A program made the position numbers and the translations under genes. Shown here piece after piece: positions 13,296 to 58,541 of a DNA stretch of 64,000 bases. The notes beneath the pieces were generated by a model that made no database searches, was not told the origin of the DNA, and saw only the letters and a list, made by a program, of their open reading frames with translations. Every line of letters begins with the position of its first letter. Position 1 is the first letter of the stretch. Origin of the DNA: Ostrea edulis (Eukaryota); contig NC_079167.1 in assembly GCF_947568905.1 (NCBI RefSeq), forward strand, positions 23,374,001 through 23,438,000. The letters run 5' to 3'.

Positions 13296-16200
13296 TTATC
13301 CTTTCCAGTCCGGAATTATTCCGAGTTTTCTCCGATTTTTGAAACCATCTCTTCTGGAAGTTCGATATTCAAATATTTTTCTTCCTCGTGGCGTGAGCGA
13401 TGAAGGAGTTGTAGAACCGTTGGTATGGGTTCCCCGAGGCGTGATTGGGGGGAGGGGCGATGTTCTGGAGTATCCATTAGACATGGCGGTTTTATCAGAC
13501 AGTGGGCGTGACCCCGTGCTTGGTTTATGTGAATGTGTGTCGCTAAGGTTATATAATGTAGGAGGCGGACCGTGACCATTTGTTTTTGGAGGAGTATCGA
13601 ACTGGACGTGTCCGTTCTGTTTGGAAGATTTGTCGAATTCATTGAGGTTATCCTCTGTCAGCGGAAGAACTTCGTTACTGTTGGTTTCCGAGTTCTCGCT
13701 CTCGGCGATAGTCTCGAGTTCCTGTGCCTCGTCAGGTGCAAAGTTCTTTCCACCCAGAGACAATGCTGTAGATTCTGCCTCCTTTAACTGTCGAGTTCCC
13801 TGTAAAGAAATACACAGGATATATATGAGGCTTGTATCTGGTAAAGAAATCCAAAATTACGACTTTATTTTGTGCTTTAATTAAGAATGAATTTTAAGAA
13901 TGTTAAATTCTTCGTTCTTTTTAGTAACAGATTTACATATAATGACGTGGAAATTAACGATATACTACAGTTTGCTACACATTTGCACGTTTATACACAA
14001 TGTGAAGGTGTGAATTGTGCATAGGATCATCATGTATTTCATATATAATGTATGGAGACAAACATGCAATGCCGTGTGCGTAATTGTTCAGTGTAAAGTG
14101 TGGAGAACAAAATCTATCACTGATGGTGACGAAGCCATGGCAAAATTCGATCAAAATTTTAAAAACTGTGGCGCGCCAAATGGTATTACAATCAGAACAG
14201 AGAGTGCAGATAGTTGACAGTCACTCAGAATAGCCAAAATATCAACCTCAGATACGTGTATCCTAGACTACCGGCAGAATATCTGATTTCTGAAATTTGC
14301 TCTTTCACCTATAAATGACGTCATTAGATAATTATGATTTTGTGCACGTGATCCAAAGGTTGAAATGTACAAGATTCCATATGGTATCTCGCTAAGGATG
14401 ACCTTTTAATGGTATTGAAAAAAAACTTATATATTAAAGAAAGGAAATATTTTTGTAACATTTATGATATGTTTGTGAAGAATCATCTACCCCAAAAAGA
14501 CAGTTTTCCGGAGCCAACAGAGAGAGAATGTTGTTCATCGAGGGTAGTTAAATCTTCGTATTGACCGCATGAACATCAGAATCAAAAGACGCAAAAAAAT
14601 CTAATATTTTGTAACTTTGCAATGCTGTTTACTTCTATTTCCATACAACCTCTAGTCGTTGTCAACGTCATAATTTGATTGCTCTAGTACATAGTGTACA
14701 TATACACTGTTGGTCATAAGTATAGCGAAATACCATCTCTCTCTGTAATGAAAAGCAATCTAAAATAAGCTGTTACCCAGTAGTGAAAGGCTGCAGCTGT
14801 GGGACTGACGTCATGAATCTGCTTCTCTGTATACGGCTCTATCAGGTCTCTACCATCCAAGGCGACATCTAGTGGAACGTCACGTGGGTCAAAGTCGGCC
14901 ATTTTGAATTTGATGGAATCTTTTCCAGTTCGACTGATAATTGCCCTGCATTTTGGCCACGTCTGAACGAATAAAAATATCATACGATTCCTAGTCTTGT
15001 TAAAGGCGATATTTTCATTTTTTTAAATAATTAATTTCATCGACTTACGTCAATATCCCATGGTCGATGCCCCAGCAGCAACAGAGTACAGGACATGACT
15101 TCATGAACGCCCGCCGGTGGCTTAGCGTAGCGTTTTAGTTCCGTTAAGGCTTTTGAATCCGTCATCATCACCTCCTTTCTCAAGTTCTTCAGATTGTTAA
15201 GTCGTTCTAACAGACGGTTTGCCAGCACTATCTCCGAGTCTAGGATGTTGTTGAAATTGTTGGCTCTCGCCCTGTTTAGCATGCGCTCTAGTGTCGGGAT
15301 GTGTCTTTTTTCGTAGGCACTCAGTAAATCTACAACGTTTCATCACCAAATGTGACATACAACACAATGCGATAACTAAAAGGGTATGAATAGTACTATC
15401 TAATCGCTATATCTTTATCGACCATCATCATACTAGTTAAAGAATATATGAAGAAAATATATCACAAATATTCTACAAGCTTCATTTCTCACACATCACA
15501 GGCTTTGTGAAAATACACTGATTCCACCGTTGTTATCAATGATTATCAAAGAACTTACTACTATTAATAGAGTAAAATAAAAATAAAGTTACTATTTCTA
15601 TGCCTATCTATTGATAGGCATATTTTAATAAATTACAAACAATTAAGTAAGGAAATTTCCTATTAGGCGTTTTGTATGAGGAAAAGATTTCATGAAATAC
15701 ATAATGTAAAACTTATACGGTACATATGTATATTTAAATCTGTTTCGCTGACATGTAAATCGAATTAGCAAATAGAAGAGCCACAACAAAACGTGAAAAA
15801 GTAACAACACAAAGATAGTTAAAGACAAATCTAAGCTATCGTACAGAGAAAATCCAAGCTATCGTACAGAGAAAATCCAAGCTATCATACAGAGAAAATC
15901 CAAGCTATCGTACAGAGAATTAGACATGTAGTGGATAATGGTATGCTGCTTCATTAAATTACATTGACAAGAAACAAAATACACGTATAGATGTGCTTAA
16001 TGTCAATCTGTATATTTTGATAGTACATGAGGTTACGAAAAGTACAACAGAGTTACACAGGTGCAGATTAGTGGTCACTCGTGGGTGCATCATCTTTGCT
16101 ACCTTGGCGAACAGACAACGCCTTCAGTGTGTTTTCAGCGTTCTCCATTAGCCGATCTTGGTTATTATTGCTCACATTCCCGGCGTAGGTAATCATTGCC

Positions 16201-41212: not shown

Positions 41213-44200
41213 AGACCGGTGAAGGATTCAAATCTAGACCTATGCTCGGCGCTTATGGCCATTGTTTAGCGTGCCACACCTACTGTGACACGGGACATCC
41301 GTTTTTAAGGTAATATCCGATGACCCGTGACATTCACACCTGATGCCAAGCGTTTGGCGATGGAACTGTCACTACCTGTTTGTCGCGGCCGGGATTCGAA
41401 CCCCGACCTTCCACATTCGAGGCGAATGCTCTACCTCTAGACCACCGCGGCGGTCAGGATTAATGTACATAAATCAAATTTGCAGTTATTGAAAAAGAAA
41501 GGGCGAAAAATTTAACATGCATGCGTTATGTTTTAAAACTGAAGCTAGATTCCTCTCATTTATTTGACAATGAATAGGGCCTTGGTTTTCATCAATGAAT
41601 ATTCTAAAACACATTTTTGGTGTCGTTTTCTTGAAATTAAGCAACCAAAGACCATCTTTCGCACTGATATATCAAATGTTTTATTCCTAGAATTTCAAAA
41701 AGCTGTGGAAACTCTTCAGTCATTAGATCATGGCTTTAGATTTAATATGAAATGATATAAGTTCGCAGTCCCTACTTTGTTGATCTTTGATCTTCTTCAT
41801 CACGTCTTTTACAGCCTTTGGAAAGATGGTGTCTCGTTTGGTCTTAGATGTTGATTGGTAGAGTTCTAGATATCTTAGAATTAGATCAAGATCCCGAACC
41901 TTCAAGGCCTTCCTTAGCTTCGCTTTCATTTCTCTATTTGTAGCTGTGAAAAATATTCTCACATGTTATCATATGAAAATCAATGCATACTATTGTACAT
42001 AATAAATTTTCAACAATTTCTTATAGTCAAAATAAGGCTGTTATTTTCCTATTACCATCAGTGAATCGTTCCTGTAAAAACTCATCTAACAGATCTGAGC
42101 TTTTGATCGACCTTAGATCAGGGACTACAGTCCCAAAGTCTTTCTTTTCAGTGCCTTGATTTCTCTTTGTGTCCTTTTTCGATTTCATCTCCGTGACATC
42201 TTCTCTAACTGGAATTTCATCATCACTGTCTAAAAACACGTTTCCATCAAAATCATTTCCACCAAATAGCTTTGAGTTTGACATGGACTCGTCCCTGCTT
42301 GGATTGGATGAGGGGACTCGAATGACGGTGTACCGCCCCAATATTTGAACATGCGGACCAGACTCCTTGGTCAAGACGTCCACTTGATACCTCCCGTATC
42401 CTTGAATTCGAACTTCGATCCCATCTTTGGTTTTCACCACAGCAGCCTTGTCACCAGGCTTGTCATTGGCATCAGTTTTACTGAGTGATGTAAATACTGT
42501 TTTAATTGGATGATCTATATTGATTTTGACAATGTTTTTGGTCGTTTGAAATGTTCGCACATCTAATTCGTCTTTCTTCTTTTTCTGCTCCTTGCCATTT
42601 TTCTTGTCTTCTACGATGGTTACGCCTTTCTTTTTCGTTCGAGTGTCATCTGGCTTTGCACCACCTTTTTTCAAAACACCCTTACGAGGACTCATCTTTT
42701 CATTGCCTTTCATGTCCATATTTTTCTCTGACGGAGAATGTCTTGAATTTCCACTTCTATTTGTTTGTTTGGAGTTTAGCCTGGTTTCATTATTTTCAGT
42801 GGTTGTTTTCGTGCCTTTTCGGGTCCTATCACTATTAACGGTTACAGCAGTTTTCATACTGCCCCTAGATTCTTGTCGGCTAAGTCCGGTAGATACCGGA
42901 GGCTTGCTCATACTGGTACCATTGCCTGACGGTGTTTGATCTGTTTGGGAGATCACATTGTGACCAATATGAAATCCCATTTCCTTTGTTATATCTCCTG
43001 TGTCAGATGATGTTTTTGTTGAATTGTCTTTACAACCTGCTCGTGACTTAACAAGCTGAGATTCATTTTCCAGCACAGTGTTTGATCTCTCCATATTTGA
43101 GATGCCATCCTTTACTTTAGCCCTCCCTTTACCCTTTTTCTCAAGCTTCTCCAGCTCCTCTTTGCTGAGTGATCCTGTTGACTGAATCAAGAAACTAGAA
43201 ACTTCTTCAACTTTTTTATGCTTTTCTTTCTCGTTCCATCCAAATATATTCAGTGAATAAAGTCCAGCAACTGGTAGTTTCAGATTAAACGTCCATTGTT
43301 TGTTCTCCCTTTTGTCTTTGATACTCATGACTTTCTTTGCAGTTGGATTGGATGTGGACAATTCGCTAAACAAGGCAGCATCCTCATCGGCTGTGAATTG
43401 TAAATCGAGCTTTCCATCCCATGCCATTAAAACGCCATTTGATTCATCCATCATCTCGACGTCGAGCTGAAATGCCCCTAATTTAGGACCAATTTGACTA
43501 CCCAGTACGAAAGGATATGGATCATTCCTGGCATTTCCAGTAAATTCAATCAGGTAAGTCATAACCGTAGAATCTGGAATTTTTCCGCGCAAAACATCGA
43601 TGTCTGCAAATATTTTCAGAGTGTAGTCTCCCTGTTCAGGAAGTCTTATGTAAACAAAGTATTCCTGTCTGACGCTGTCCAGCCGACCGAGAGCGTGTCT
43701 GCTCAATGTAGCAGCATCAATTTTTGTTGATCCCAAACAATGGCTGATCTCCCTCACTTTTGACGCCGGAAATCGAATTTCTACAATCCCCGTTTCAGTT
43801 TGAATGACGTTTGACTTGGGACTTATTGGAACAATACCGAGTTCTTCTGCAAGCGGATGAGGACCCCATCCATGCTCAGGAACTTCTGGGAAACCCTTGA
43901 AGTCTTTTACAGGCACGCCACAGTGGATTAAGTAGGAAAATATTAGATTGAATTCTTGGTTATTGTATTTTTCCGTTCCATATACATCCAACCTAAATCG
44001 ACCAATGAAAGGAAAACTTACACCGAATTGTAACTTTGTGTTTGATTTGCTCATCATGACATATTTCTCTATGTCACTTGTGTCAGTATTTTCATCAACG
44101 TCTAATTCCGTCAGAGAAAACTTAAATTCTAAATCTGCACCTCTGTCTTTTGGCAAGTCAAAACAAATTTTACACGGTCTTCCGTCCGGCCGCAGAACAC

Positions 44201-45764
44201 AGTTATTTGTGTCCGGAAACTCTTTACTCACACTGAGACCCATCTCATGGTAGTATTCTCTGAGGTACGGCTGCTCCTGGAATCTTTCTACGGTTATAGG
44301 GTTGTCTAAAAGTTGCCACTGATCATCATCTGGAAAATGTGTCCAGATGAATTTGTCTGGATCACACAAAAAGAAGAATTCATTCACTGGACGTGGTTCT
44401 CCATCGGTGTCTCCGAGTTCAGTAGATAGAGTTATCTGCCCTTCTTCGTCCACTGATATCTGGTCGCGGTACTGACCATACGATATAGATGTGTGAGCCC
44501 AGAAGGGATCGATTAGGCGCCACTCGCCGTTCAGAAACACAGCGTTCCACTTAGAGGCAAGAGTTTCTTTTCGAATCTCATCTCCAACTTCATAAAAACC
44601 GTGTTTCGATACTCCATTAATAACAACACATGGGATGTTGGCGGATCTAAAACATGAAATCAAATGTAAAAAAAAATGTTGCATGGAATCTAAACTTCGA
44701 TTAATAAAAATACTGAAACATCGGTATTTAGTAGACATTCAACACTGGATTTCTTTGGCATGTTTCGGTATACTCACACACACAAAACATAGAGGAGGTT
44801 GGCATGGTCACCAAAGTCAGACTGTATCTTTATCAGATATTCCAGAGGGCTGTTTTCAGGGGGAAGAATTTGAGATGTGATGCTCTCCTCATCAAAAGAT
44901 GTCGTCCATCTAAATATAGCGCGGATTCTGTACAGGTCGTCAATAACTTTAAAACTTTTGGATACCACCAGGTGGTCTGATATATCCCAGAAATTCTCTA
45001 GTAACAGTTCTGGTGGCGCCTATAATGAACAAAAAATATAAATTATATAACAATCCGAACTCCTCGAATGTCTCGCTCACTTGACAAAGAGTCCGCGAGA
45101 GATTCGAGGAGTTCCGATTGGATTATATAACCCATTAGTTCATTTTGTAACAACATCAAGTTATTGGACGTTTAAGTTTGACATTTCATTTTTACCTCTA
45201 GAGCTGCTCGATCAATGGAGGAAAAATCAACTCGTTTGAGAAGCTCTTCTTTAGAAATATTTGGCGGAACCACCGGAAAATTTACCCCCTCCCCAAATGT
45301 TCCAGCAGCCTGATCCAAGACATCTTCTACCTACAATACACAGACGATCAATTGTTTATCGAACGAATTGTCGCGAAGTAAAGTATAATTGTGTTGGGGT
45401 TTTGGGGGGTTTTTTTTTTGTTTTTTTTTTTAGAAATATCTCTGTGTTTGCATGTTTATGTAATTAGATGTAAAAAGAAAACCTTACAAATTTGAAAAGT
45501 AATTCAAACTCATTGCAGTTAGATGTGATTTATATAAACACATAAAATGCAACCCCACCCCCCCAAAAAAATATTTCCTCTTCTACTCGCTTATTTATCT
45601 TATATTTTTGCTTATATTCCAATATGCACATTCGTAGTACCTAGCTTTTATCATACTGTGATTACAATGGCTAAGCGACATTCTGAGAAATGGATGCTTC
45701 AAGATAAAATAAAAATTGTAGTACTTACTGCGAATACCCGAGGTCCCTGGGCCTGATTCCCCAT
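39784..45764 (-). CDS. Paralogue B: same family, about 1260 aa; exons 45764-45729, 45330-45196, 45019-44778, 44646-42056, 41943-41776, 40885-40620, 40529-40344, 39942-39784
   Basis: Seen: phase-consistent chain of 3783 nt. Motifs SKEELLKRVDFSSIDRAALE, IRAIFRW, GDHANLLYVLC, KWNAVFLNGEWRLIDPFWA, FFFLCDP..FIWTHFPDDDQWQLL, EIKQYANPPEGVHECIMATLVLLG, VSRGAAAFYMW. First exon (MGNQAQGPRVFA|gtaagt) is moderately supported. Confidence 0.83.
40135..40340 (+). mobile_element. Family 1 copy ending next to the donor of paralogue B exon 7
   Basis: Seen: gggtgtcaccggtcaacaggg...cacctgatcccatctctg...gagattggtcactgttcattatc. Confidence 0.7.
41150..41453 (-). mobile_element. Near full-length tRNA-derived SINE (family 2)
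   Basis: Seen on minus strand: ccgccgcggtggtctagaggtagagc (A box) ... ggttcgaatcc (B box), core gtgacagttccatcgccaaacgc...aaacggatgtcccgtgtcacagtaggtgtggcacgc, shared 3' end ggtgacgtctccatatgagtgaaaattctcgaga. Confidence 0.85.
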
Positions 45765-46600
45765 GGTAACACCCTCATACAGCTGCAACTATATTCACCA
45801 AATAATTGTTAATCCTGGGGGCTATGCCAATCAACAACTGCCTCGCACAATTGCCCAGGTTTACGTGGCTAGAGACCTACCAGATACAACGATAACTAAC
45901 ACACTCACATACGGCAGTGTCCAAAAGTCAATAAATTGTTTCACCCTGATCTTAAAGCAGCTTTGTAGATGTGTTGTTCTTGGAGATTACATTTTTCGCA
46001 GAAGGTATCAATTTAAGTAGCCAATTAACATAGAATCACCGGCTCATAGTTGAAACTAGCAGATAAAAATTTAAATTCATCACAATACGAATTCATTTGA
46101 TATTTTCATTTCTTCTTCATGTTATTCTTTTCGCATTTGGATGTTTGCATAAATATTTCACCCAATTTCTAAAACGTTAAAATACGACGAATAGGGAGTA
46201 TCGGTATTTAAATATGATCAACCAGGACAACCAATGTTAAAGACAGACACAACAGACTCGATCATATTGGGTGGGATGGGATGGGAAAGTAAAATACACA
46301 TAGATATTCTTACATTTATTTATAAAATATTGTTGAAAATGGAAAAAAAAACAATGGCCTATAGCAGTAATTCATAACGACAATACTGTCATTTTTTATG
46401 GAATTTGAAATTACTTCCATGACAGTAATTTGACGTAATTGCAAATCTAGCAATTTGCAAGTCATTTACAAAATCCAATGGTCCAGTGAATATGATGTCA
46501 ATATACGTAGAAACGACACTTGTACAACAAGTATGATTGTAGCGAATGATAATTCTTTCGACACTACTATAAACTGTTATCTTCTGGTTCTAATTATCCT

Positions 46601-49600
46601 TCAAATTTTCAACACAGTGCTTCCGTCTCTTCTACCACTGTAAGGCACCATGCTGGCAGACCTAGGACCAATATTCCGCGCAGACGTTTTCCCGCTCTTT
46701 CTGAGAGAGTTCCGGTATGATTCCGCCTCCTGCACCATGTTGTTTGTCTAAATCAAAATCGTTGAAATTTGTTATGGAGTTTGAATGTAACAGATTTCAG
46801 CAATTAGCAAATAGGGTTATATACATAAGAATAATTTGCTTTTTACAAACCCAAGTATAAAACGCAGCCGCTCCTTTGCTGACGTCACGGATTTGCAAAT
46901 ATTCAAATCGACTCAGGATTTTCTTCGTAGCTGCAACAATAGTTGGATTGGTATCTTTTGGGTCGAAGGCGGAAATTCGTCTAAGGATGTTATTTTTACC
47001 AGTTTTGAACAGCAAAGAATGACATTTTTTCCAGTCCTGAAATAGTCGTGTTATGGTTATTGCATATCTAGGGTAATAGCAGATCGTAGAAATTATGGTA
47101 ATTACGCGGTTGTCACCTTGACTACTCGAGCCTCCTCCCCCAGTAACAAAAAGGTGGCACCCAGGGTCTGGTGCACGCCGTTTGGTGGTTTGGTGTACTT
47201 TTTCATTTCCGTCACAGCGTTCTGGTTCATCTCTATCACAGTCGTGTGAATCCTCTTCATTCTCAGGTACCTTTCCAGCAGTCTGCCAGCTAGGAGGATC
47301 TGAACCGTCAGCGCCATGTTGTAGTTGTATTTGTGGGCGCGATTGATTGCCTCTCGGAGAACATCAGGATCCTTAGACAAAGTGGCGTTGATCAAATCTG
47401 AAACATATTCTGATTTAATGATAACCTAAAATATTTTTACATGTTTAGTTATGATTATAAATACACACATTCTGCATGTGTGATAGGATTGACGTCAAAC
47501 TAATTGATTGATTGATTGTATATTGTTTAACGTTCCGCTCGAGAATATTCCCCTCATTCGGAGACGTCACCGTTGCCGATGAAGGGCTGCAAAATTTGGG
47601 CATATGCTCGGCGCTTACGGCCTTTGAGCAGGGGGGTATTGTGCCACGCCTGCTGTGACACGGAGCCTTGGTTTTTGCGGTCTCATCTGAAGGACCATCC
47701 CATTTAGTCGTCTTTTACGACAAGGAAGGCGTACTGACTACTGAGGACCTATTCTAACCCGGATCCTCACGGCATTAAAACTAATGCGTTCGTGCCTTTA
47801 TACTATGGGTCCATAATATATCTTTTGTGGAATTTTACTTCAAACACTTCCATTCGAAATATCTTACTTTGAATTAACATTTAAGCATGTATTTGAACTT
47901 TTCAAGTGTCATGTATTCATGGAAGATGAAAAAAAAGTGAAGATAACGAATAATTATTTGATCAATCTCATAAATTCCACAAAGAATACAAAATTAAGAT
48001 TAATGCAAACAATGACTCCTGGACACACCAGAGGTTGGAACAGGTGCCTAGGAGGAGTTGGGATTTCCTGTTGACCGGTCAACCCATATTCAAAATCAGC
48101 ATGCAATGAACGACCTAACAGTTAATATGAACCAAGTCAGACAGCATTCGACATAATGACAATTTGATCATTAAAACGACCACAGATATGCGGAATGCTT
48201 TAAGATGTAATTTTAAGTGCTTCACACAAACTTTAAAGCTCCTTGATTAATATTGAAATGATAAACTAGTATGTATTTATATGGTATTGGTGTGTAATGA
48301 TAAAAGTTTTTTTTTCCAGTTATCAGCCTATATCATTCAAAGTCCGAAGTTGATAGCCGATTGTGGTGTCTCGAATTGATATGCAAAATGGTGTATACTA
48401 TTCTTTATGTAATACAAAGTAGTTTTAACTGCTCCTATATAATCTCCGGAATTTTCGTTTGTTAACAGATATATTTCAATTGATCTTACTGTCTTTTGCT
48501 TTAATTTGGTTAATTATCCGCCTGGCTTCTCGTCTGAGTTCGTCATCTTTAGGAGGTTTGGTAGCTTTATATTCCGAGAAGCTCTGTGTTAATTCTTTCA
48601 GGTTCCTGTCCCTGATCGCTCTGTGTAACTTCCGGACAATTGTTCGTCGGCGTGCTACAGAAAGCATTGGATAAAACATTAAAACGTTATATCATAAACA
48701 GGCTTGTCAGGAATATATAAAATTGACAACGTACCAATATTTACTTCCATCATTTTGGTATGATGAACATTCTGATTGAGTTACATAGTTTAGAATCCTT
48801 TTTATTTATTAAATTGATATCTTGAAGTTATTACAATATANNNNNNNNNNNNNNNNNNNNNNNNNNNNNNNNNNNNNNNNNNNNNNNNNNNNNNNNNNNN
48901 NNNNNNNNNNNNNNNNNNNNNNNNNNNNNNNNNNNNNNNNNNNNNNNNNNNNNNNNNNNNNNNNNNNNNTTTTTCTATTCAGATCTATTTAATTCAAAAG
49001 TTGTCAAATAAAAAATGTAAAGATAGCGAACAATGATTAATTCGTATACGCAAGAAGTCCTATAAAAAATTTCAAATACAAAGTTGAGGGCAGAGAAAAC
49101 CTGGACCCCTGGACATACCAGAAACGGGATCGAGAGTCAGAATGTCACAGTATGAATGCACGGCGCATCATAAAATATGCTGGCGTAAGCGTCGCAGTTC
49201 ATACCCTCATGTATTTTCAAAAATGATAAAATTATTTCTTAGATATGTAATGTTTTTTTAGATTGCCATTTTCATAAAAAGATCTTCCGTGTGTAATATT
49301 TTACTGGCAATCCAATTTAACAAATAAAGTTTTACCTTTGTATTGAAACAATTAATAATCCATAGTGGTTTTTGAAGAATTTTATTTTACACTTGATGAA
49401 CTAGATATATCGGTTATCATCTACATTTCTTAATGTAACAAAATATTTCTTGTAAACAAAGGTAAATGAAATATTATTGTAAAGTTTTCTTTCAGATTTC
49501 AGTACAATATCTTCTAGGTAATAATTTAGAATCGTGTTCAAATACAGGATGCTTTCTATTTTCTCTATTATAGAATCACGTCTGATATCAAATTAAACAA

Positions 49601-52600
49601 TTTCCATCGCCAAACGCTCAGCATCAGGTGTGAATGTCACGGGTCCTGAAAGATGACCTTAAAAACGGATTTCCCGTGTCGCAGTAGGTGTGGCACGCTA
49701 AAGAACCCTCACTGCTCAATGACAGTAAGCTCCGAGCAAAGGTCTAAATTTGAAGCCCTTCACCAGTCTTGGTGACGTCTCCATATGAGGGGAAAATTCA
49801 CGAGAGAGACGTTAAGCAAGATACAATCAATCGTCTGGGATAAATCAGCATAAATAAGTTGCGGTATACGTGTAACTAAGGCATTCACAACACAAGATTT
49901 TCCAAATATCGTTTACATTATTTTCTTCCATGATTCAAAAATCTATATTGGTTAAATCAAAAGTTGTATAGTTTTTAAACTATCTTTATCTCCCCATTTT
50001 AATAAAACATTGATTACAGTTGAGCGTTGTGAAAAAGTCAGCTCTTTTATTTAACACATGGAGTAATACCTCATGAAATACAGGTAGATTCCAAAACCAT
50101 TTCTATAACTCTCGTGGTAGCCCATCTTACCCATGCGATTTATTGTGATGTCCGCACAGAAAATGTATCAGTGATCTTAAACCGGATGCTAAGGGGGGAA
50201 AGTCAGCTTGCGCATGCACAGTTTTTCGTTTGCACCTGCTGCTATGAGAAAACTTAGCTTAATGATGCGACCTATATCTACAGACTGGAACCTAACAGGA
50301 TAGCATGTAACCCATTCATGGGGGAAAGTCAGCTTTCGCATGCATCGGGATCGGCAAAGCTTCATAAGAAACAGTTGTTAAGAGAATCTAAAATATATCG
50401 TTTTATATGGTTTTTCAAAAACAGTTTCTAGTGTTCTCAATAAGTAATATTTTGTTCATATCTTAGAATAGGCATCATCGGTGAAGTTGCACTGAGCAAT
50501 TAAAATTTTAAAAAAAAAAAACGACATTCAAGCTCGTGGGCATCAATATTTTGTTGCCAGATTTACATGTACAATGTATATCTTTGGATTATGGTATTTT
50601 GTTGTCGGGTCTATATCTATTTATTGGATTTAAGTACGAAACCTGCACGTTATTATTTAGGCCCGATTGTGTCTCCCGTTGAATTTGAACTTCGAAGTCC
50701 AAATCAAAGACAATGATGATTCTTTGATAAGAAAAAGCACGGCTCTGCCATTTTTATTTCGTGAGTTCGATTGTTTTTCGTTTTGGAGAAAGCGTTCAAC
50801 TACAGTGCTTTGGGCGCTAGAAAGTTAGAAATCCAACATTTTACAAAGATATTATGTACTCTAGAAGAAAATTTAAAAGTTGTGCATTGCGAATTTTCTT
50901 AGCGTGTCATCAAATACATTTAACCTACCAACACGATATTTCCTTTTGGTTTCTTCGTCCATATTATTTTCATCAATGTCTGGTAATCCAATCGCTTGTG
51001 ATTCATTGGCAACGCGCTCATCATCACCCTCAAAATCATCCTCGCCCTCATCTTCTATCTTGTCCTCAGATATGACATGTGCGGCCACCATCCCAAATGC
51101 GGAAATACTGACGCTGTCATTTCTAGTGGCAGTGCGTGCATTGTTATTGTCCTGAATGGTTAATATGCTTTCGTTATCAGTGTCTGTAATACTCTTACCG
51201 TCCGAGTAATTGCTAAAAACGTCGTCACTGATTTTGTCCTGGTTATCTAGAGATTTTGTCGGAGAGGTTTCCTTTCCTGCTTTTTCCGTCTGTATGATCG
51301 CAATGCCCGTCACAGCTCCAGCTGCATCGACATCTTTTAGATTTTCATCTGATGGACTTGCTGTGGAAGGTTTGGTTTCGTTTGTCTCTGGTTTTTCGTC
51401 CTTCGAGGAATTTGCCTTGTTACATTTATCACTGTTGTTTGTGTGCTTTGAATCATTTCCAGTGTCGTTATTGTCTTTTATTTTGGAATCATTAACAACA
51501 CCCAGAACGACAACACTTTGCAGTTCTTCCGGTGTCGATTCTCTACTTGCTGTTTCGGTATCAATTTGTTCTTTTTCACCATTTGTCCTCATTTCTTGAT
51601 CGTTAGTCTTTGTAGCAATATCCTTCTCATTGCCTTTATTTTCCACGTTTTTACTTTCTTTGTCATCATCTTCGTTTTCATAGTTGTCATCATCCTCCGT
51701 TACCGTATATAAAGTGGTTCTATAACTTCCCTCCTCATCTTCACGTGTCTCTTCATAATCACTAACATGATTTTCTTCCACTTGTTCTTCTTCCGCTTCC
51801 TGGGGTTTAAGAGTCTCTATCAGCGCCTCTATATCGTCTGTATAAGAGTCAATAGATGGACGACGACAGATGGTGAACCTAGCCACCGTCTCCAGTGTGT
51901 TCGATGTATCTTGAGCCCAAACATCCATCACGTATTCTCCATCTTCCCTTAGTGTTATATCGAACGTATCTTTGTTGATCATAACGGACGGCCTGGTTCC
52001 ATTTTCTCCGTCTCTGCCATCTCTTCTACTTATTCTTGTAAACACTTTCTCACTTACATCTGTATTTGGTATTGGTATCGTGATGGTTTCTTCTGAGGTG
52101 CGGATAGTAGCCGTAATTATTTCATCAATGTCTTCGGTATCGTCTGCAAACTTGACGCGCTTAGCATCAGTAACGATTGAAGTGATCATGTAACTCTGAA
52201 CCTCGTACACGTTTCCACTGTCCTCTTCCATAGACGCTAAAACGTTCATTGAGTATTCCCCGGGAACCGGGAGGGTTAGATCAAACACCCAGTGGCTATC
52301 AACGTGTGTGGTCTCAATTTTACTTCTCGTTTGCGAGTCTCTATCACTACAGGAAAGATCACACATTAACAGAACTCCGTCAGTATGGGTTTCAAATTCT
52401 ACCCTCGCCCTTCCACCCCAAGCTTTAATAATCCCGTTCTGGTAGCTCAGAACGTCAATACCAAATTTTTCTGCGTAAGGCTTTGTTCCCAGATTTCCAC
52501 CTGCAACATTTGGGAAAGGTTCGTTAATCTTTTGTCCACCTTCATAGACGAGCAGTAAATTAATTATGTCCTTTGGAATATAGTTTTTTATTTTATTCCC

Positions 52601-54760
52601 ACCGTCATCAGCATATATCTTCAGTGCGTATTCTCCTTCTCGGGGTAGTCGAACTTTCACGATATATTTCTCTCTGTCTCTTCGTGCTAGAATATATTTG
52701 CTCAATAATGCCTCATTGATGAGAACATTTTTTAATGCAACGGCAAGGAAGGGAATGCCTGTTACTTCAAATATCAATTCCATATCTCCACTTTTCGTTG
52801 TAATGCGTCCACCACAGTCTGCTCGATTCCTGAGACATATCCCGGCATCCTCTGCATGCGGTGTTACACCCCATCCTAAATCTGGACAATCCGGAAAAGG
52901 CAAGATATTGTCAAGCTTTTCGTCACACTGAATCAGGTATGTACACAAAAGTTTATATGCTTTTGACTTTTTTACATCAACAGCAAAGATATCCATTTGA
53001 AACATTCCAGTAAGAGGCAACTTGATTGTAAATTTTATTTGCCCGTCTGTGTGCTCAAAGAAAACAAATCTTTCGAGAAGTAAATCTACGGGTTTTTCAG
53101 ATCCATCAGAGCTCACCTGCGTCCTGGACTGGCTGAGACTGTATGCAAACTTATAAAACCTTCCTTTTGATTTTGGTAACTTGAAAACGATTTCCACAGG
53201 GTCTCCCTCAGTATGGAGAATACAATTTTCGCACTTGTTTCCAATTTCCATCTCCAGAAGGTGAAACTGTTCCCTGATATAAACTCTCTCCTCAAATCCC
53301 TTTTCTGTAATTGGAGACTGAACAAGTTGCCAACTAGGATCATCGGCGAGGTGAGTCCATAACAACTGTTGTGGATCAACAAGGAAATAAAAGTCATTAA
53401 AAGGGACGGGACCTTCACCGTTTTCAGAAACTCGTTTTAGATTCTTCTTCTTTGTGACTTCAAGTCTGTCAATAGAGTTTCGTTCCTCAACACAGACAGA
53501 AGCCCAGAAACAGTCCACAAGTCTCCATTCACCATCCAAATAAACGCCATTCCACTGAGAGGCCATGTTTTCCCTGCTTACCTCACCCCCAAGTTCATAG
53601 ATGGCGCTTTTTGTCATTCCATTAATTATAACACAAGGAATGTCAGCTAATCTGCAAAGCAATATTAACAAGTGAACGATGTCTGACATTACATGGAGAC
53701 AAGATATACATGTACAAAAAATGTACAAAAATATCAACTTACGAACACATTGTGTAGAAGAGATGTGCATGATCCCCGATCTCACACTGAATCTTTAGAA
53801 AATGTTCGAGGGGAGATCCGTCCGGCGGCAAAACATCAGTGTCGATGTTCATAATGTCGTAGGACACAATCCATCGGAAAATGGCACGGACTTTAAACAG
53901 ATCGTTGACCACCTCACCTTCCGGTGACACAATCATGTATTCTACTACATCCCAAAAGTCTTCAACCAGCAAGTCCGGGGGAACCTGTGGAGAAAATTTA
54001 CACAGTTTGAATTTTCCAAATTCCCCCAAAGCATTTTCTTGTTGTACCATGCAGTCAAATGACAGTTAATGAAAAAGAGTAGATATTGGTGATAATTGTA
54101 AAGCATTCATTAGTATTGCATAACCTACCTGAAGTGCAATATCGTCCATAACCTTGAAGTTGACGCTCTTTAGGAGCTCCTTCTTGGACACGAGGGGCGG
54201 TTTGGGATTGGGCTTGCCTTTCTTACCAACAGTTCCTCGGTGGATAGGCATTGGTTTGTTGACATTCTAAAAGTGTTGCATCATCGATCAGTATGTGTAC
54301 TAAACATGACGTATCAAGGATGAATAAAGAATAATAAGTGTTATAAACTCAAACAAAACAAACTACATCTTACTAGCCCAATAGTTTAGAGTTCGTTCTG
54401 CAAACAGGCTTAAACCCGTCTGTAAGAGCTCGACTCTTGCAGGTTTTATTTTCATTCTTGAATAAAACTGCTCTTCAAATATTACCACATCATAAAATAT
54501 AAAAACGAAAGTACATGAATAGTATCCTGACTTTTTTTGCAATTTAATTTTTTTTATCACAACTTGCTATTTTGAAAATTCTAATTTCTTACTTTTCTGC
54601 TGGTATTTTTCAGTGTACAATCTTGTTCGGTAATGAAATAATTATTTTTTGTTTATTGTTGACGTCATACTACCACTGCACACTACATCTCACAGCCCCT
54701 TACCTTCTCCTGCCCCCTGGGGGTGTCAATAGGGGGCACTTTAGAATTCCCTGTTCCCAT
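46601..54760 (-). CDS. Paralogue A: same family, about 1312 aa, long acidic linker; exons 54760-54704, 54266-54129, 53984-53743, 53651-50929, 48654-48490, 47397-47117, 47036-46851, 46747-46601
   Basis: Seen: phase-consistent chain of 3939 nt. Starts MGTGNSK with an in-frame upstream stop and donor aag|gtaagg. Motifs SKKELLKSVNFKVMDDIALQ, VRAIFRWI, GDHAHLFYTMC, QWNGVYLDGEWRLVDCFWA, YFLVDP..LLWTHLADDPSWQL, EMKKYTKPPNGVHQTLGATFLLLG, DWKKC, FDP, VSKGAAAFYTW. Intron 4 contains the N gap. Confidence 0.86.
47503..47772 (-). mobile_element. Family 2 SINE-like copy, hairpin-head variant
   Basis: Seen: reverse-complement match to 19478-19741 including the (caat)n tail. Confidence 0.8.
47930..48085 (-). 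mobile_element. Family 1 copy
   Basis: Seen: caccagaggttggaacaggtgcctaggaggag...cctgttgaccggtca is the reverse complement of the family 1 core. Confidence 0.65.
48841..48969. other. Assembly gap (129 N)
   Basis: Seen directly; lies in intron 4 of paralogue A. Confidence 1.
49597..49831 (+). mobile_element. 5'-truncated family 2 SINE
   Basis: Seen: ttccatcgccaaacgctcagcatcaggtgtgaatgtcacggg...ggtgacgtctccatatgag...gacgttaagcaagatacaatcaatc. Confidence 0.8.
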
Positions 54761-57589: not shown

Positions 57590-58311
57590 AGAACCACGAG
57601 CCTTCATCTGATGATCTAATCTGAACTAGAACCACGAGCCTTCATCTGGTGATCTAATCTGAACTAGAACCACGAGCCTTCATCTGATGATCTAATCTGA
57701 ACTAGAACCACGAGCCTTCATCTGGTGATCTAATCTGAACTAGAACCACGAGCCTTCATCTGATGATCTAATCTGAACTAGAACCACGAGCCTTCATCTG
57801 GTGATCTAATCTGAACTAGAACCACGAGCCTTCATCTGGTGATCTAATCTGAACTAGAACCACGAGCCTTCATCTGATGATCTAATCTGAACTAGAACCA
57901 CGAGCCTTCATCTGATGATCTAATCTGAACTAGAACCACGAGCCTTCATCTGATGATCTAATCTGAACTAGAACCACGAGCCTTCATCTGATGGTCTAAT
58001 CTGAACTAGAACCACGAGCCTTCATCTGATGATCTAATCTGAACTAGAACCACGAGCCTTCATCTGGTGATCTAATCTGAACTAGAACCACGAGCCTTCA
58101 TCTGATGATCAAATCTGAACTAGAACCACTAGCCTTCATCTGATGATCTAATCTGAACTAGAACCACGAGCCTTCATCTGGTGATCTAATCTGAACTAGA
58201 ACCACGAGCCTTCATCTGATGATCTAATCTGAACTAGAACCACGAGCCTTCATCTGGTGATCTAATCTGAACTAGAACCACTAGCCTTCATCTGATGATC
58301 TAATCTGAACT
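57590..58311. repeat. 38-bp minisatellite, 19 near-identical copies
   Basis: Seen: agaaccacgagccttcatctg(a/g)tgatctaatctgaact at exact 38-nt period. Confidence 0.97.
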
Positions 58312-58541
58312 ACGTGTATCTTGTCAGGGAAAATATCCGCGATGGTTGGTACGTCCATCATATCCATTTTCGCCCCATAACTGACTTGAACTTCGTAATA
58401 GCTCATGTAACAAGTTTGGGGAAGAAGTATTGTTAAGTCAGCTATGGCGCAAAGCGTGATATGCAAATACTTGCTACGTACCAGTTAACCTCGGGATCTT
58501 TGTGTTCACATGCTGAACGGAGTAACCCTTTTTCGTTCAAC

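What the first reader, a model, noticed from the sequence alone, without database searches (positions are those of the whole stretch)
14777..47397. Motor-less dynein microtubule-binding-domain-like module fused to KY/hillarin-type transglutaminase-like proteins
Seen: each paralogue ends with a two-exon module (D 15329-14777, C 27702-25552, B 40885-40344, A 47397-46851). A reads NQNAVTEMKKYTKPPNGVHQTLGATFLLLGEEARVVKDWKKCHSLLFKTGKNNILRRISAFDPKDTNPTIVAATKKILSRFEYLQIRDVSKGAAAFYTW. Established: the dynein heavy-chain MTBD follows E-x-K-S/Y-x-x-PP-x-x-V...LLG...W...L...FD...S-x-AA-x-x-L-x-x-W (cytoplasmic dynein-1: [42 protein letters not shown]). These landmarks occur in similar order and spacing in all four copies, yet no AAA+ ring or Walker motif exists anywhere in these genes. 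Inference: an MTBD fold detached from the motor and grafted onto a TG-like/Ig scaffold, possibly a static microtubule anchor. KY, hillarin, LTD-1 and Cyk3 are described as cytoskeletal, muscle or cytokinesis proteins; I know of no functional description of this fusion, but could not check databases.
Basis: partly seen in the sequence, partly recalled or inferred. Interest (0 to 1): 0.92.

Follow-up and report, generated by a model that had tools for sequence, protein, structure and literature searches.

The report
Motor-less dynein microtubule-binding domain on KY-like proteins
Four neighbouring oyster genes for KY/hillarin-type scaffold proteins each end in a domain that is a true relative of the microtubule-gripping tip of the dynein motor, without any motor. 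The same domain sits on hundreds of membrane-tethered invertebrate proteins that nobody seems to have studied.

Summary
Four tandem minus-strand genes (about 54760-13296) encode KY-like proteins with a transglutaminase-like core and Ig-like_KY domains. Each carries a roughly 150-residue C-terminal module split at identical splice sites. A third, short terminal exon follows the module, so it is not quite the end of the protein.

The module is homologous to the dynein heavy-chain microtubule-binding domain (MTBD):
- A 95-sequence profile hits 68 PDB sequences at E<=0.01. The 60 listed are all dynein MTBDs, the best at E 5e-13.

No AAA+ domain is present.

The module is widespread and mobile. 1611 non-redundant proteins match, and none of the best 150 is dynein-sized. 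They come from sponge, molluscs, annelids, a brachiopod, echinoderms, a hemichordate, tunicates and amphioxus. About half of the carriers start with an N-myristoylation-type MGxxxS motif. Others are type-I membrane proteins with the module in the cytoplasmic tail.

The best reading is a static membrane/cortex-to-microtubule tether. Homology is about 97% certain. Microtubule binding is about 50% and untested: only two of six yeast dynein tubulin salt-bridge positions are conserved, and two more have a conserved basic residue next door. I found no literature on this.

The parts
46601..54760 (-). Gene A, a KY-like protein with orthologues in Saccostrea (73% over the large exon) and Magallana gigas K1R698 (63%). 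It starts MGTGNSK at 54760. An N run at 48841-48969 lies in an intron and was left as it is.
50876..54065 (-). Gene A body: a transglutaminase-like core (exon within 53742-54065 plus the start of the large exon), three Ig-like_KY stretches and an acidic low-complexity linker, all within the open frame 50876-53794.
   Evidence: (Ig-like_KY E 3e-47; Transglut_core E 3.6e-4)
47117..47425 (-). Gene A module exon 1: helix, CC1-like helix and MTBD helix H1 up to ...LLLGEEARVVK. The 5' acceptor was not mapped; homology starts near 47398.
46851..47036 (-). Gene A module exon 2: DWKK...SKGAAAFYTW, covering MTBD helices H2-H6.
46601..46747 (-). Gene A terminal exon: a short CC2-like helix (TNNMVQEAESYRNSL) and a tail ending RRDGSTVLKI, then the stop.
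39784..45330 (-). Gene B, a KY-like paralogue. The large open exon is 42030-44738. Module exons are ~40808-40620 and 40529-40344, and the terminal exon is 39942-39787 (ends RRDGTVILRL). The invariant W is replaced by F. The first exon was not found.
24111..35242 (-). Gene C, a KY-like paralogue. The large open exon is 31327-33348. Module exons are ~27700-27425 and 25737-25552. The terminal exon 25028-24114 encodes a 305-aa Pro/Lys-rich tail. This is the most diverged module.
13296..20937 (-). Gene D, a KY-like paralogue that starts MGSGVSQ at 20937. The large open exon is 16352-18349. Module exons are ~15330-15049 and 14962-14777, and the terminal exon is 13799-13299.

Best explanation
Each of the four genes encodes a large cytoplasmic scaffold protein of the KY/hillarin family. 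Reading from the N-terminus:
- an N-terminal lipid-anchor signal (MGxxxS, seen in A and D and in most orthologues);
- a transglutaminase-like core, probably not catalytic;
- Ig-like_KY domains;
- a long acidic linker;
- at the C-terminus, a domain that shares ancestry and fold with the dynein heavy-chain microtubule-binding domain, mounted on a stub of only a few helical turns instead of the long stalk.

With no AAA+ ring and no long coiled coil to shift registry, the domain cannot be switched by ATP. The most likely mechanism is constant, nucleotide-independent binding to the microtubule lattice. The protein would then tie the plasma membrane or cortex to microtubules.

Shown here: the homology, the fold, the absence of a motor, the presence of body and module in one mRNA, and the association with membrane tethers.

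Inferred: microtubule binding, myristoylation, loss of catalysis, and a division of labour among the four copies. Copy A has the strongly basic core; C and D are neutral.

The confidence given (0.5) is for the whole statement including microtubule binding; for homology to the dynein MTBD alone it is about 0.97.
For: Homology:
- Single sequences already put dynein MTBDs on top (DNAH6 E 2e-3; Pfam MT 22.8 bits against a cut-off of 24).
- A 7-sequence profile: every hit with E<0.1 is a dynein heavy chain at its MTBD, best 1.5e-8.
- A 95-sequence profile: 68 PDB sequences at E<=0.01; the 60 listed are all dynein MTBDs, best 5e-13.

Fold:
- The AlphaFold model has pLDDT 93.2 and pTM 0.81.
- 49 of the top 50 Foldseek PDB hits are dynein stalk/MTBD structures.

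Selection:
- The module is the best conserved part of protein A against M. gigas (90/82/87% against 63% for the body).

One mRNA:
- The complete KY body plus module is one uninterrupted ORF on three independently assembled 3.6-5.3 kb contigs from sequencing runs.

Membrane theme:
- 71 of 144 module proteins start MG[^P]xx[STAGCN], and 19 start MGC.
- CLCA/VWA/EGF fusions have a transmembrane helix before the module.

Tubulin contacts, using the yeast list in PMC7042235:
- E3122 is invariant (95/95).
- R3124 is basic in 79%.
- A conserved basic cluster lies in H3.
- Copy A's core carries a net charge of +9.
Against: - No binding experiment exists.
- Of six yeast salt-bridge positions, K3117 is Q and R3152 is basic in only 33%.
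- R3159 is G, although the next residue is basic in 79%.
- The H6 arginine R3201 is D/E in 53%, with an R one position earlier.
- Cores of copies B, C and D are near neutral (+1, 0, -1).
- B lacks the invariant W.
- Pfam's own threshold for MT is not reached by the window's orthologues.
- Myristoylation is inferred from a sequence motif only.
Confidence: 0.5

Rival explanations
1. The module is a true MTBD homologue but has been repurposed as a protein-protein interaction or structural domain. It would not bind the microtubule lattice and might instead bind septins, filamin-like partners or other cortical proteins.
Confidence: 0.35
2. Only copy A (and its orthologues) is a working microtubule binder. 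Copies B, C and D are diverging duplicates whose modules are losing or changing that function.
For: HMM scores fall from A 177 to D 143, B 111 and C 104 bits. Net core charge is +9 against +1, 0 and -1. B has lost the invariant W and the N-terminal helices. C has lost the G of LLG and the H3 'RR', and has gained a 305-aa Pro/Lys tail.
Against: All four keep open reading frames, conserved splice sites and most core landmarks. This argues for continued selection on each. No expression data were available.
Confidence: 0.4
3. The resemblance to the dynein MTBD is a chance or convergent likeness of small helical bundles.
Confidence: 0.02
4. The fusion is an artefact: the module exons belong to a separate small gene wrongly joined to the KY-like genes.
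For: Small stand-alone module proteins of about 300-350 aa do exist in molluscs. No transcript from this species was examined.
Against: The same order recurs four times in the window with phase-compatible splice sites. More than 40 predicted KY+module proteins exist in other species. One scallop-type protein is a single uninterrupted ORF on three independent short contigs that behave like transcripts.
Confidence: 0.02

Closest known systems
Dynein heavy chain microtubule-binding domain (tip of the stalk; Pfam MT, PF12777)
   Same: Same fold and detectable common ancestry. Both have a six-helix bundle between two antiparallel helices. Shared landmarks are E-x-[KR]-[SY]-x-x-PP, LLG, W, FD and S-x-AA-x-x-x-x-W. 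The core is about 100 residues without the axonemal 'flap'.
   Different: There is no AAA+ ring and no roughly 100-residue coiled-coil stalk. The CC2 side is cut to a few turns and then a Gly/Pro break. The module sits at the C-terminus of scaffold or membrane proteins. Four of six yeast tubulin salt-bridge residues are changed or shifted. ATP-driven affinity switching is therefore impossible.
KY (kyphoscoliosis peptidase) / hillarin / LTD-1 / Cyk3 transglutaminase-like family
   Same: Transglut_core plus Ig-like_KY domains. Sources name the orthologues 'Kyphoscoliosis peptidase' or 'KY-like'. A leech (Helobdella) KY-like protein of 1194 aa carries the module at 981-1132.
   Different: The C-terminal MTBD-like domain, the acidic linker and the MGxxxS start are not part of the published descriptions I know of. 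Whether vertebrate KY lacks the module was not tested here. The catalytic Cys and His positions appear substituted; this is my reading of the sequence against the motif as I remember it, not a tool result.
Chlamydomonas radial spoke 1 chain C (probably RSP2; PDB 7jtk_C) and a Toxoplasma intraconoidal-microtubule MAP (PDB 9ya2_L, probably ICMAP2)
Static membrane-microtubule linkers in general (e.g. CLIMP-63, spectraplakin GAR domains)
   Same: Proposed way of working: a membrane or cortex anchor at one end and a nucleotide-independent microtubule binder at the other.
   Different: No sequence or fold relation. This is an analogy only, from general knowledge.

Membership tests
Dynein MTBD homology group (Pfam MT region, positions ~95-215) | Significant sequence-profile match, in register, to dynein MTBDs | tested here: met
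   The 95-sequence profile has yeast dynein MTBD as best hit at E 5e-13. It finds 68 PDB sequences at E<=0.01, and the 60 listed are all dyneins. The 7-sequence profile gives 1.5e-8.
Dynein MTBD homology group (Pfam MT region, positions ~95-215) | Pfam MT curated gathering score (24 bits) | tested here: not met
   Orthologues of copy A score 22.8 and 21.5 bits, and an annelid member 17.4. Some family members do pass: P0051 24.6 and P0034 26.0. One KY-like protein carries a precomputed PF12777 hit.
Dynein MTBD homology group (Pfam MT region, positions ~95-215) | Six-helix bundle held between two antiparallel helices (CC1/CC2), with the conserved proline(s) at the CC1-H1 junction | tested here: met
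   [not shown]
Dynein MTBD homology group (Pfam MT region, positions ~95-215) | Tubulin-contacting charged residues of H1, H3 and H6 (yeast K3117, E3122, R3124, R3152, R3159, R3201; PMC7042235) | tested here: inconclusive
   E3122 is invariant and R3124 is basic in 79%. K3117 is Q and R3152 is basic in 33%. R3159 is G, with the next residue basic in 79%. R3201 is D/E in 53%, with the previous residue R in 61%.
Dynein MTBD homology group (Pfam MT region, positions ~95-215) | Binds microtubules | not testable with these tools
   Needs co-sedimentation, TIRF or cryo-EM.
Dynein heavy chain (the motor protein) | AAA+ ring, linker and long stalk in the same polypeptide | tested here: not met
   There are no AAA-type Pfam hits in the large exons or in full-length orthologues. 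None of the 150 best family members exceeds 1861 aa. These are not dyneins.
KY-like / hillarin family | Ig-like_KY domains (PF23265) after a transglutaminase-like core (PF01841) | tested here: met
   Ig-like_KY scores E 3e-47 in A and 3e-34 in D. Transglut_core scores E 3.6e-4 on the exon fragment. Both are precomputed on full-length orthologues.
KY-like / hillarin family | Catalytic Cys-His-Asp triad of active transglutaminase-fold enzymes | not tested
   The PDB sequence search with the core gave nothing usable. By eye the Cys and His positions look substituted, but that rests on a motif recalled from memory.

The most novel reading that the evidence does not exclude
The dynein microtubule-binding domain is not unique to dynein. 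It would be an autonomous, transferable module that animals from sponges to amphioxus have attached to lipid-anchored scaffolds and to the cytoplasmic tails of membrane receptors. That would create a large, unrecognised class of ATP-independent membrane-to-microtubule tethers that use dynein's own binding site on tubulin and could compete with motors for it. Weaker fold matches in ciliates, chytrids and trypanosomes hint that the class may extend beyond animals. The oyster four-gene cluster would be a natural series of such binders with graded charge.
Probability: 0.45. Interest if true: 0.85.

Novelty: new variant of a known kind. Interest (0 to 1): 0.72.

Why it matters
The dynein MTBD is treated as a part of the motor whose affinity is set by the stalk. 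A natural family of MTBDs with no motor would matter in four ways.
1. It would give the field ready-made 'locked' MTBDs for studying how the domain reads the lattice.
2. It would reveal a new class of microtubule-associated proteins in most non-vertebrate animals. These include receptors (CLCA-, VWA- and EGF-type) wired directly to microtubules.
3. It would suggest a concrete function for the poorly understood KY/hillarin family in invertebrates. For example, it could explain why leech hillarin concentrates at the microtubule-rich axon hillock.
4. It bears on how the dynein stalk tip arose.

If the domain turns out not to bind microtubules, it is still a clear case of a motor part recycled for another use.

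Tried and rejected
- Pfam on the single module exons gave nothing, because the domain is split by the intron. It worked only on spliced orthologues.
- A PDB sequence search with the transglutaminase-like core gave only chance hits, so the catalytic status is unresolved.
- I tested whether the helical exons upstream of the module (A 48479-48691, B 41726-41965, C 28341-28529, D 16071-16286) repeat the module's first two helices, forming a repeat-built stalk. An HMM of those helices does not find them (E>20), so the idea is rejected.
- I looked for further module copies or copies on the plus strand. There are none.
- The earlier-findings index gave nothing for this place or these words.
- Literature searches for hillarin/KY with dynein or microtubules, 'MTBD-like' and PF12777 gave nothing relevant.
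- Human EFCAB5 came up as a weak fold match (E 1.0, probability 0.90). The EFCAB5 papers I read describe EF-hand and DPY30 elements only, so I left it as a lead.
- I could not decide which dynein class the module is closest to. Profile scores are similar for cytoplasmic and inner-arm dyneins, and no dynein sequence set was available for a tree.
- I could not fold the window's own spliced module, because it has no single reference. The M. gigas orthologue, about 85-90% identical in the module, was folded instead.
Full report
**What is in the window**

The window is AT-rich animal DNA. Its best protein matches are oyster proteins: Saccostrea echinata at 73% and Magallana gigas K1R698 'Kyphoscoliosis peptidase' at 63% over the large exon.

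Four paralogous genes lie head to tail on the minus strand. Each has:
- an exon for the first half of a transglutaminase-like core;
- one very large open exon (A 50876-53794, B 42030-44738, C 31327-33348, D 16352-18349) that carries the rest of the core and Ig-like_KY domains (Pfam PF23265, E 3e-47 in A and 3e-34 in D);
- a short helical exon;
- the module in question.

**Check of the observation**

tblastn with two full-length orthologues finds the module in all four genes at the stated coordinates.

The exon ends are the same in all four copies. Exon 1 ends after a full codon at ...|GT. Exon 2 starts AG|(D/T)(W/F) and ends exactly after the W codon at TGG|GT.

A hidden Markov model built from 95 family members of other species scores the spliced copies at 177 (A), 143 (D), 111 (B) and 104 (C) bits. 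Run over all six reading frames of the window, it finds exactly eight segments: the two exons of each copy, all on the minus strand, at E 1e-12 to 1e-23, and nothing else below E 1.

Two corrections are needed. First, the module does not end the protein. After the W there is a further exon with a strong acceptor in every copy. In A it is 46747-46604, matched at 87% by the M. gigas protein. This exon supplies a few more helical turns and a tail. A and B end RRDG(S)TV(I)L+(I/L), and D has an RRDG motif near its end. Copy C instead has a 305-residue Pro/Lys-rich tail. Second, the landmarks are not all kept: B has F for the family-invariant W and lacks the first helices, and C has D for the G of LLG.

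**Is it a dynein MTBD?**

Sequence evidence:
- The separate exons give no Pfam hit. The spliced orthologues hit Pfam MT (dynein stalk/MTBD, PF12777) at positions 100-215 of the model with 22.8 and 21.5 bits, just under the 24-bit cut-off. Two other family members pass it (24.6 and 26.0 bits).
- A single scallop sequence searched against all PDB chain sequences has dynein MTBDs as its best hits (DNAH6, E 2e-3).
- A profile of seven KY-type modules raises this to 1.5e-8. Every hit with E<0.1 is a dynein heavy chain aligned at its MTBD.
- A profile of 95 diverse modules gives 68 PDB sequences at E<=0.01. The 60 listed are all dyneins of every class, the best being the yeast cytoplasmic dynein MTBD at E 5e-13 over the whole domain.

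Structure evidence:
- An AlphaFold2 model of the M. gigas orthologue of copy A (about 85-90% identical to A in the module) is confident: pLDDT 93.2, pTM 0.81. It is all-helical, with a long helix before and a long helix after a compact bundle.
- Foldseek against PDB returns dynein stalk/MTBD structures in 49 of the first 50 rows. TM by target is 0.69-0.71, with rmsd 2.3-3.7 A for isolated MTBDs.

Homology and fold are therefore established as well as computation can do. No AAA+ domain is found in the genes or their orthologues.

**The module is a widespread mobile domain**

An exhaustive HMMER search of 1.84 billion representative proteins finds 1611 matches at E<=1e-3 and 608 at E<=1e-10. The best 150 are 84-1861 residues long, so none is a dynein.

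Of these 150, 46 have a KY-like body. Others are:
- CLCA-N plus VWA proteins of amphioxus;
- VWA proteins of a tunicate;
- an EGF-repeat protein of an acorn worm;
- small proteins of about 300-350 residues in molluscs;
- a group whose N-termini look like EF-hands by eye, including a sponge (Oscarella) transcript.

KY-plus-module proteins occur in more than 40 species-level entries from bivalves, gastropods, a brachiopod, an annelid and amphioxus. All are named 'uncharacterized' or 'kyphoscoliosis peptidase'. One of them carries precomputed Pfam MT together with the KY domains.

AlphaFold DB clusters add a leech KY-like protein, sea urchin, sea cucumber, Ciona, a rotifer and an orthonectid. Weaker matches appear in ciliates, a chytrid and trypanosomes.

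The fusion is real at the RNA level at least in a scallop-type species. The complete 1047-residue ORF, from MG start to module, is uninterrupted on three independently assembled contigs of 3.6-5.3 kb. The oyster genes have many introns over the same span.

**What the carriers have in common**

Of 144 module proteins that begin with M and are at least 250 residues long, 71 start with MG[^P]xx[STAGCN], the consensus for N-myristoylation. Nineteen start MGC, which allows additional palmitoylation. Many of the rest are visibly truncated gene models.

In the window, A starts MGTGNSK (54760) and D starts MGSGVSQ (20937).

The CLCA, VWA and EGF fusions have a signal peptide or ectodomain, then one hydrophobic helix, then the module. 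This places the module in the cytoplasmic tail. So the module is consistently found on the cytoplasmic side of membrane-tethered proteins. I take this as the strongest clue to function.

**Would it bind microtubules?**

The yeast study PMC7042235 lists six salt-bridge residues whose basic members each lower affinity more than twofold when mutated. I mapped them through the HMMER alignment onto the 95-sequence alignment:

| Yeast residue | State in the module family |
|---|---|
| E3122 | E in 95 of 95 |
| R3124 | basic in 79% |
| K3117 | Q |
| R3152 | basic in 33% (K in copies A and C) |
| R3159 | G, but the next residue is basic in 79%, followed by further conserved basic positions, including an RR pair also seen in the DNAH6 alignment |
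| R3201 (H6) | D/E in 53%, with an R one position earlier in 61% |

The net charge of the 100-residue core is +9 in A, +1 in B, 0 in C and -1 in D. The family mean is +2.1.

This pattern fits a binder that uses the same face with a modified contact set, at least for copy A. It also fits a repurposed domain.

**Mechanism proposed**

With only a short stub in place of the stalk, and no AAA+ ring, the registry shift that switches dynein's affinity cannot be driven. The domain should sit in one state.

I propose a static tether:
- an N-terminal lipid anchor at the membrane;
- the KY-like body and Ig domains as a scaffold;
- a long acidic linker as a spacer;
- the C-terminal MTBD homologue on the microtubule.

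I put about 50% on microtubule binding, about 35% on a different partner, and about 97% on homology. The four copies look functionally graded, with A the best candidate binder.

**Comparison with what is known, and novelty**

The domain is a member of the dynein MTBD homology group, but the proteins are not dyneins. The body is a member of the KY/hillarin family.

I found no paper that describes an MTBD outside dynein, or this architecture. Databases show traces of it: sub-threshold or marginal Pfam MT hits, and automatic names such as 'Cytoplasmic dynein 2 heavy chain 1' on a 199-residue protein. It is visible there but, as far as I can tell, unremarked.

I rate it a new variant of a known kind, with interest 0.72. 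It would rise if binding is shown.

Noticed in passing
window 807-7915, minus strand: A separate multi-exon gene with VWA (7358-7915 and 4046-4306), ephrin-receptor-like (1712-2014) and Sushi (807-1139) exons, SVEP1-like. It runs off the window's low end, so its C-terminus could not be checked for the module.
   Followed up: partly
window 46604-46640, 39787-39830, 13299-13340 (terminal exons of A, B, D): A conserved tail motif Y-x-[ST/G]-RRDG-[ST] lies near the C-terminus of A, B and D and in the Saccostrea orthologue (RRQGTTVLKM). A and B end in a hydrophobic-x-hydrophobic C-terminus. Its function is unknown.
   Followed up: no
window 24114-25028, minus strand: The terminal exon of copy C encodes a 305-residue Pro/Lys-rich tail with no Pfam match. 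It is absent from A, B and D.
   Followed up: partly
[not shown]
   Followed up: partly
P0037, P0050 (Branchiostoma), P0093 (Styela), P0108 (Saccoglossus): Type-I membrane proteins with CLCA-N/VWA or EGF ectodomains carry the same module in their cytoplasmic tails. This would wire surface receptors or channel regulators to the cytoskeleton.
   Followed up: partly
window 34263-34678; 57590-58312; 11557-12425; 2937-3409: Large tandem arrays. A 24-bp unit x17 lies between exons of gene C, a 38-bp unit x19 upstream of gene A, a 166-bp unit x5 downstream of gene D, and a 43-bp unit x11 inside the VWA/Sushi gene.
   Followed up: no
window 48841-48969: A run of 129 N lies in the intron of gene A between the large exon and the helical exon. 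It was left untouched, and no exon appears to be affected.
   Followed up: no
window 53742-54065 and orthologues (transglutaminase-like core): By eye the positions of the catalytic Cys and His of the transglutaminase fold look substituted (…IGDHAHLF… and …SQWNAV…) while the Asp is kept. This suggests a pseudo-enzyme. It rests on a motif recalled from memory and was not confirmed by a tool.
   Followed up: partly
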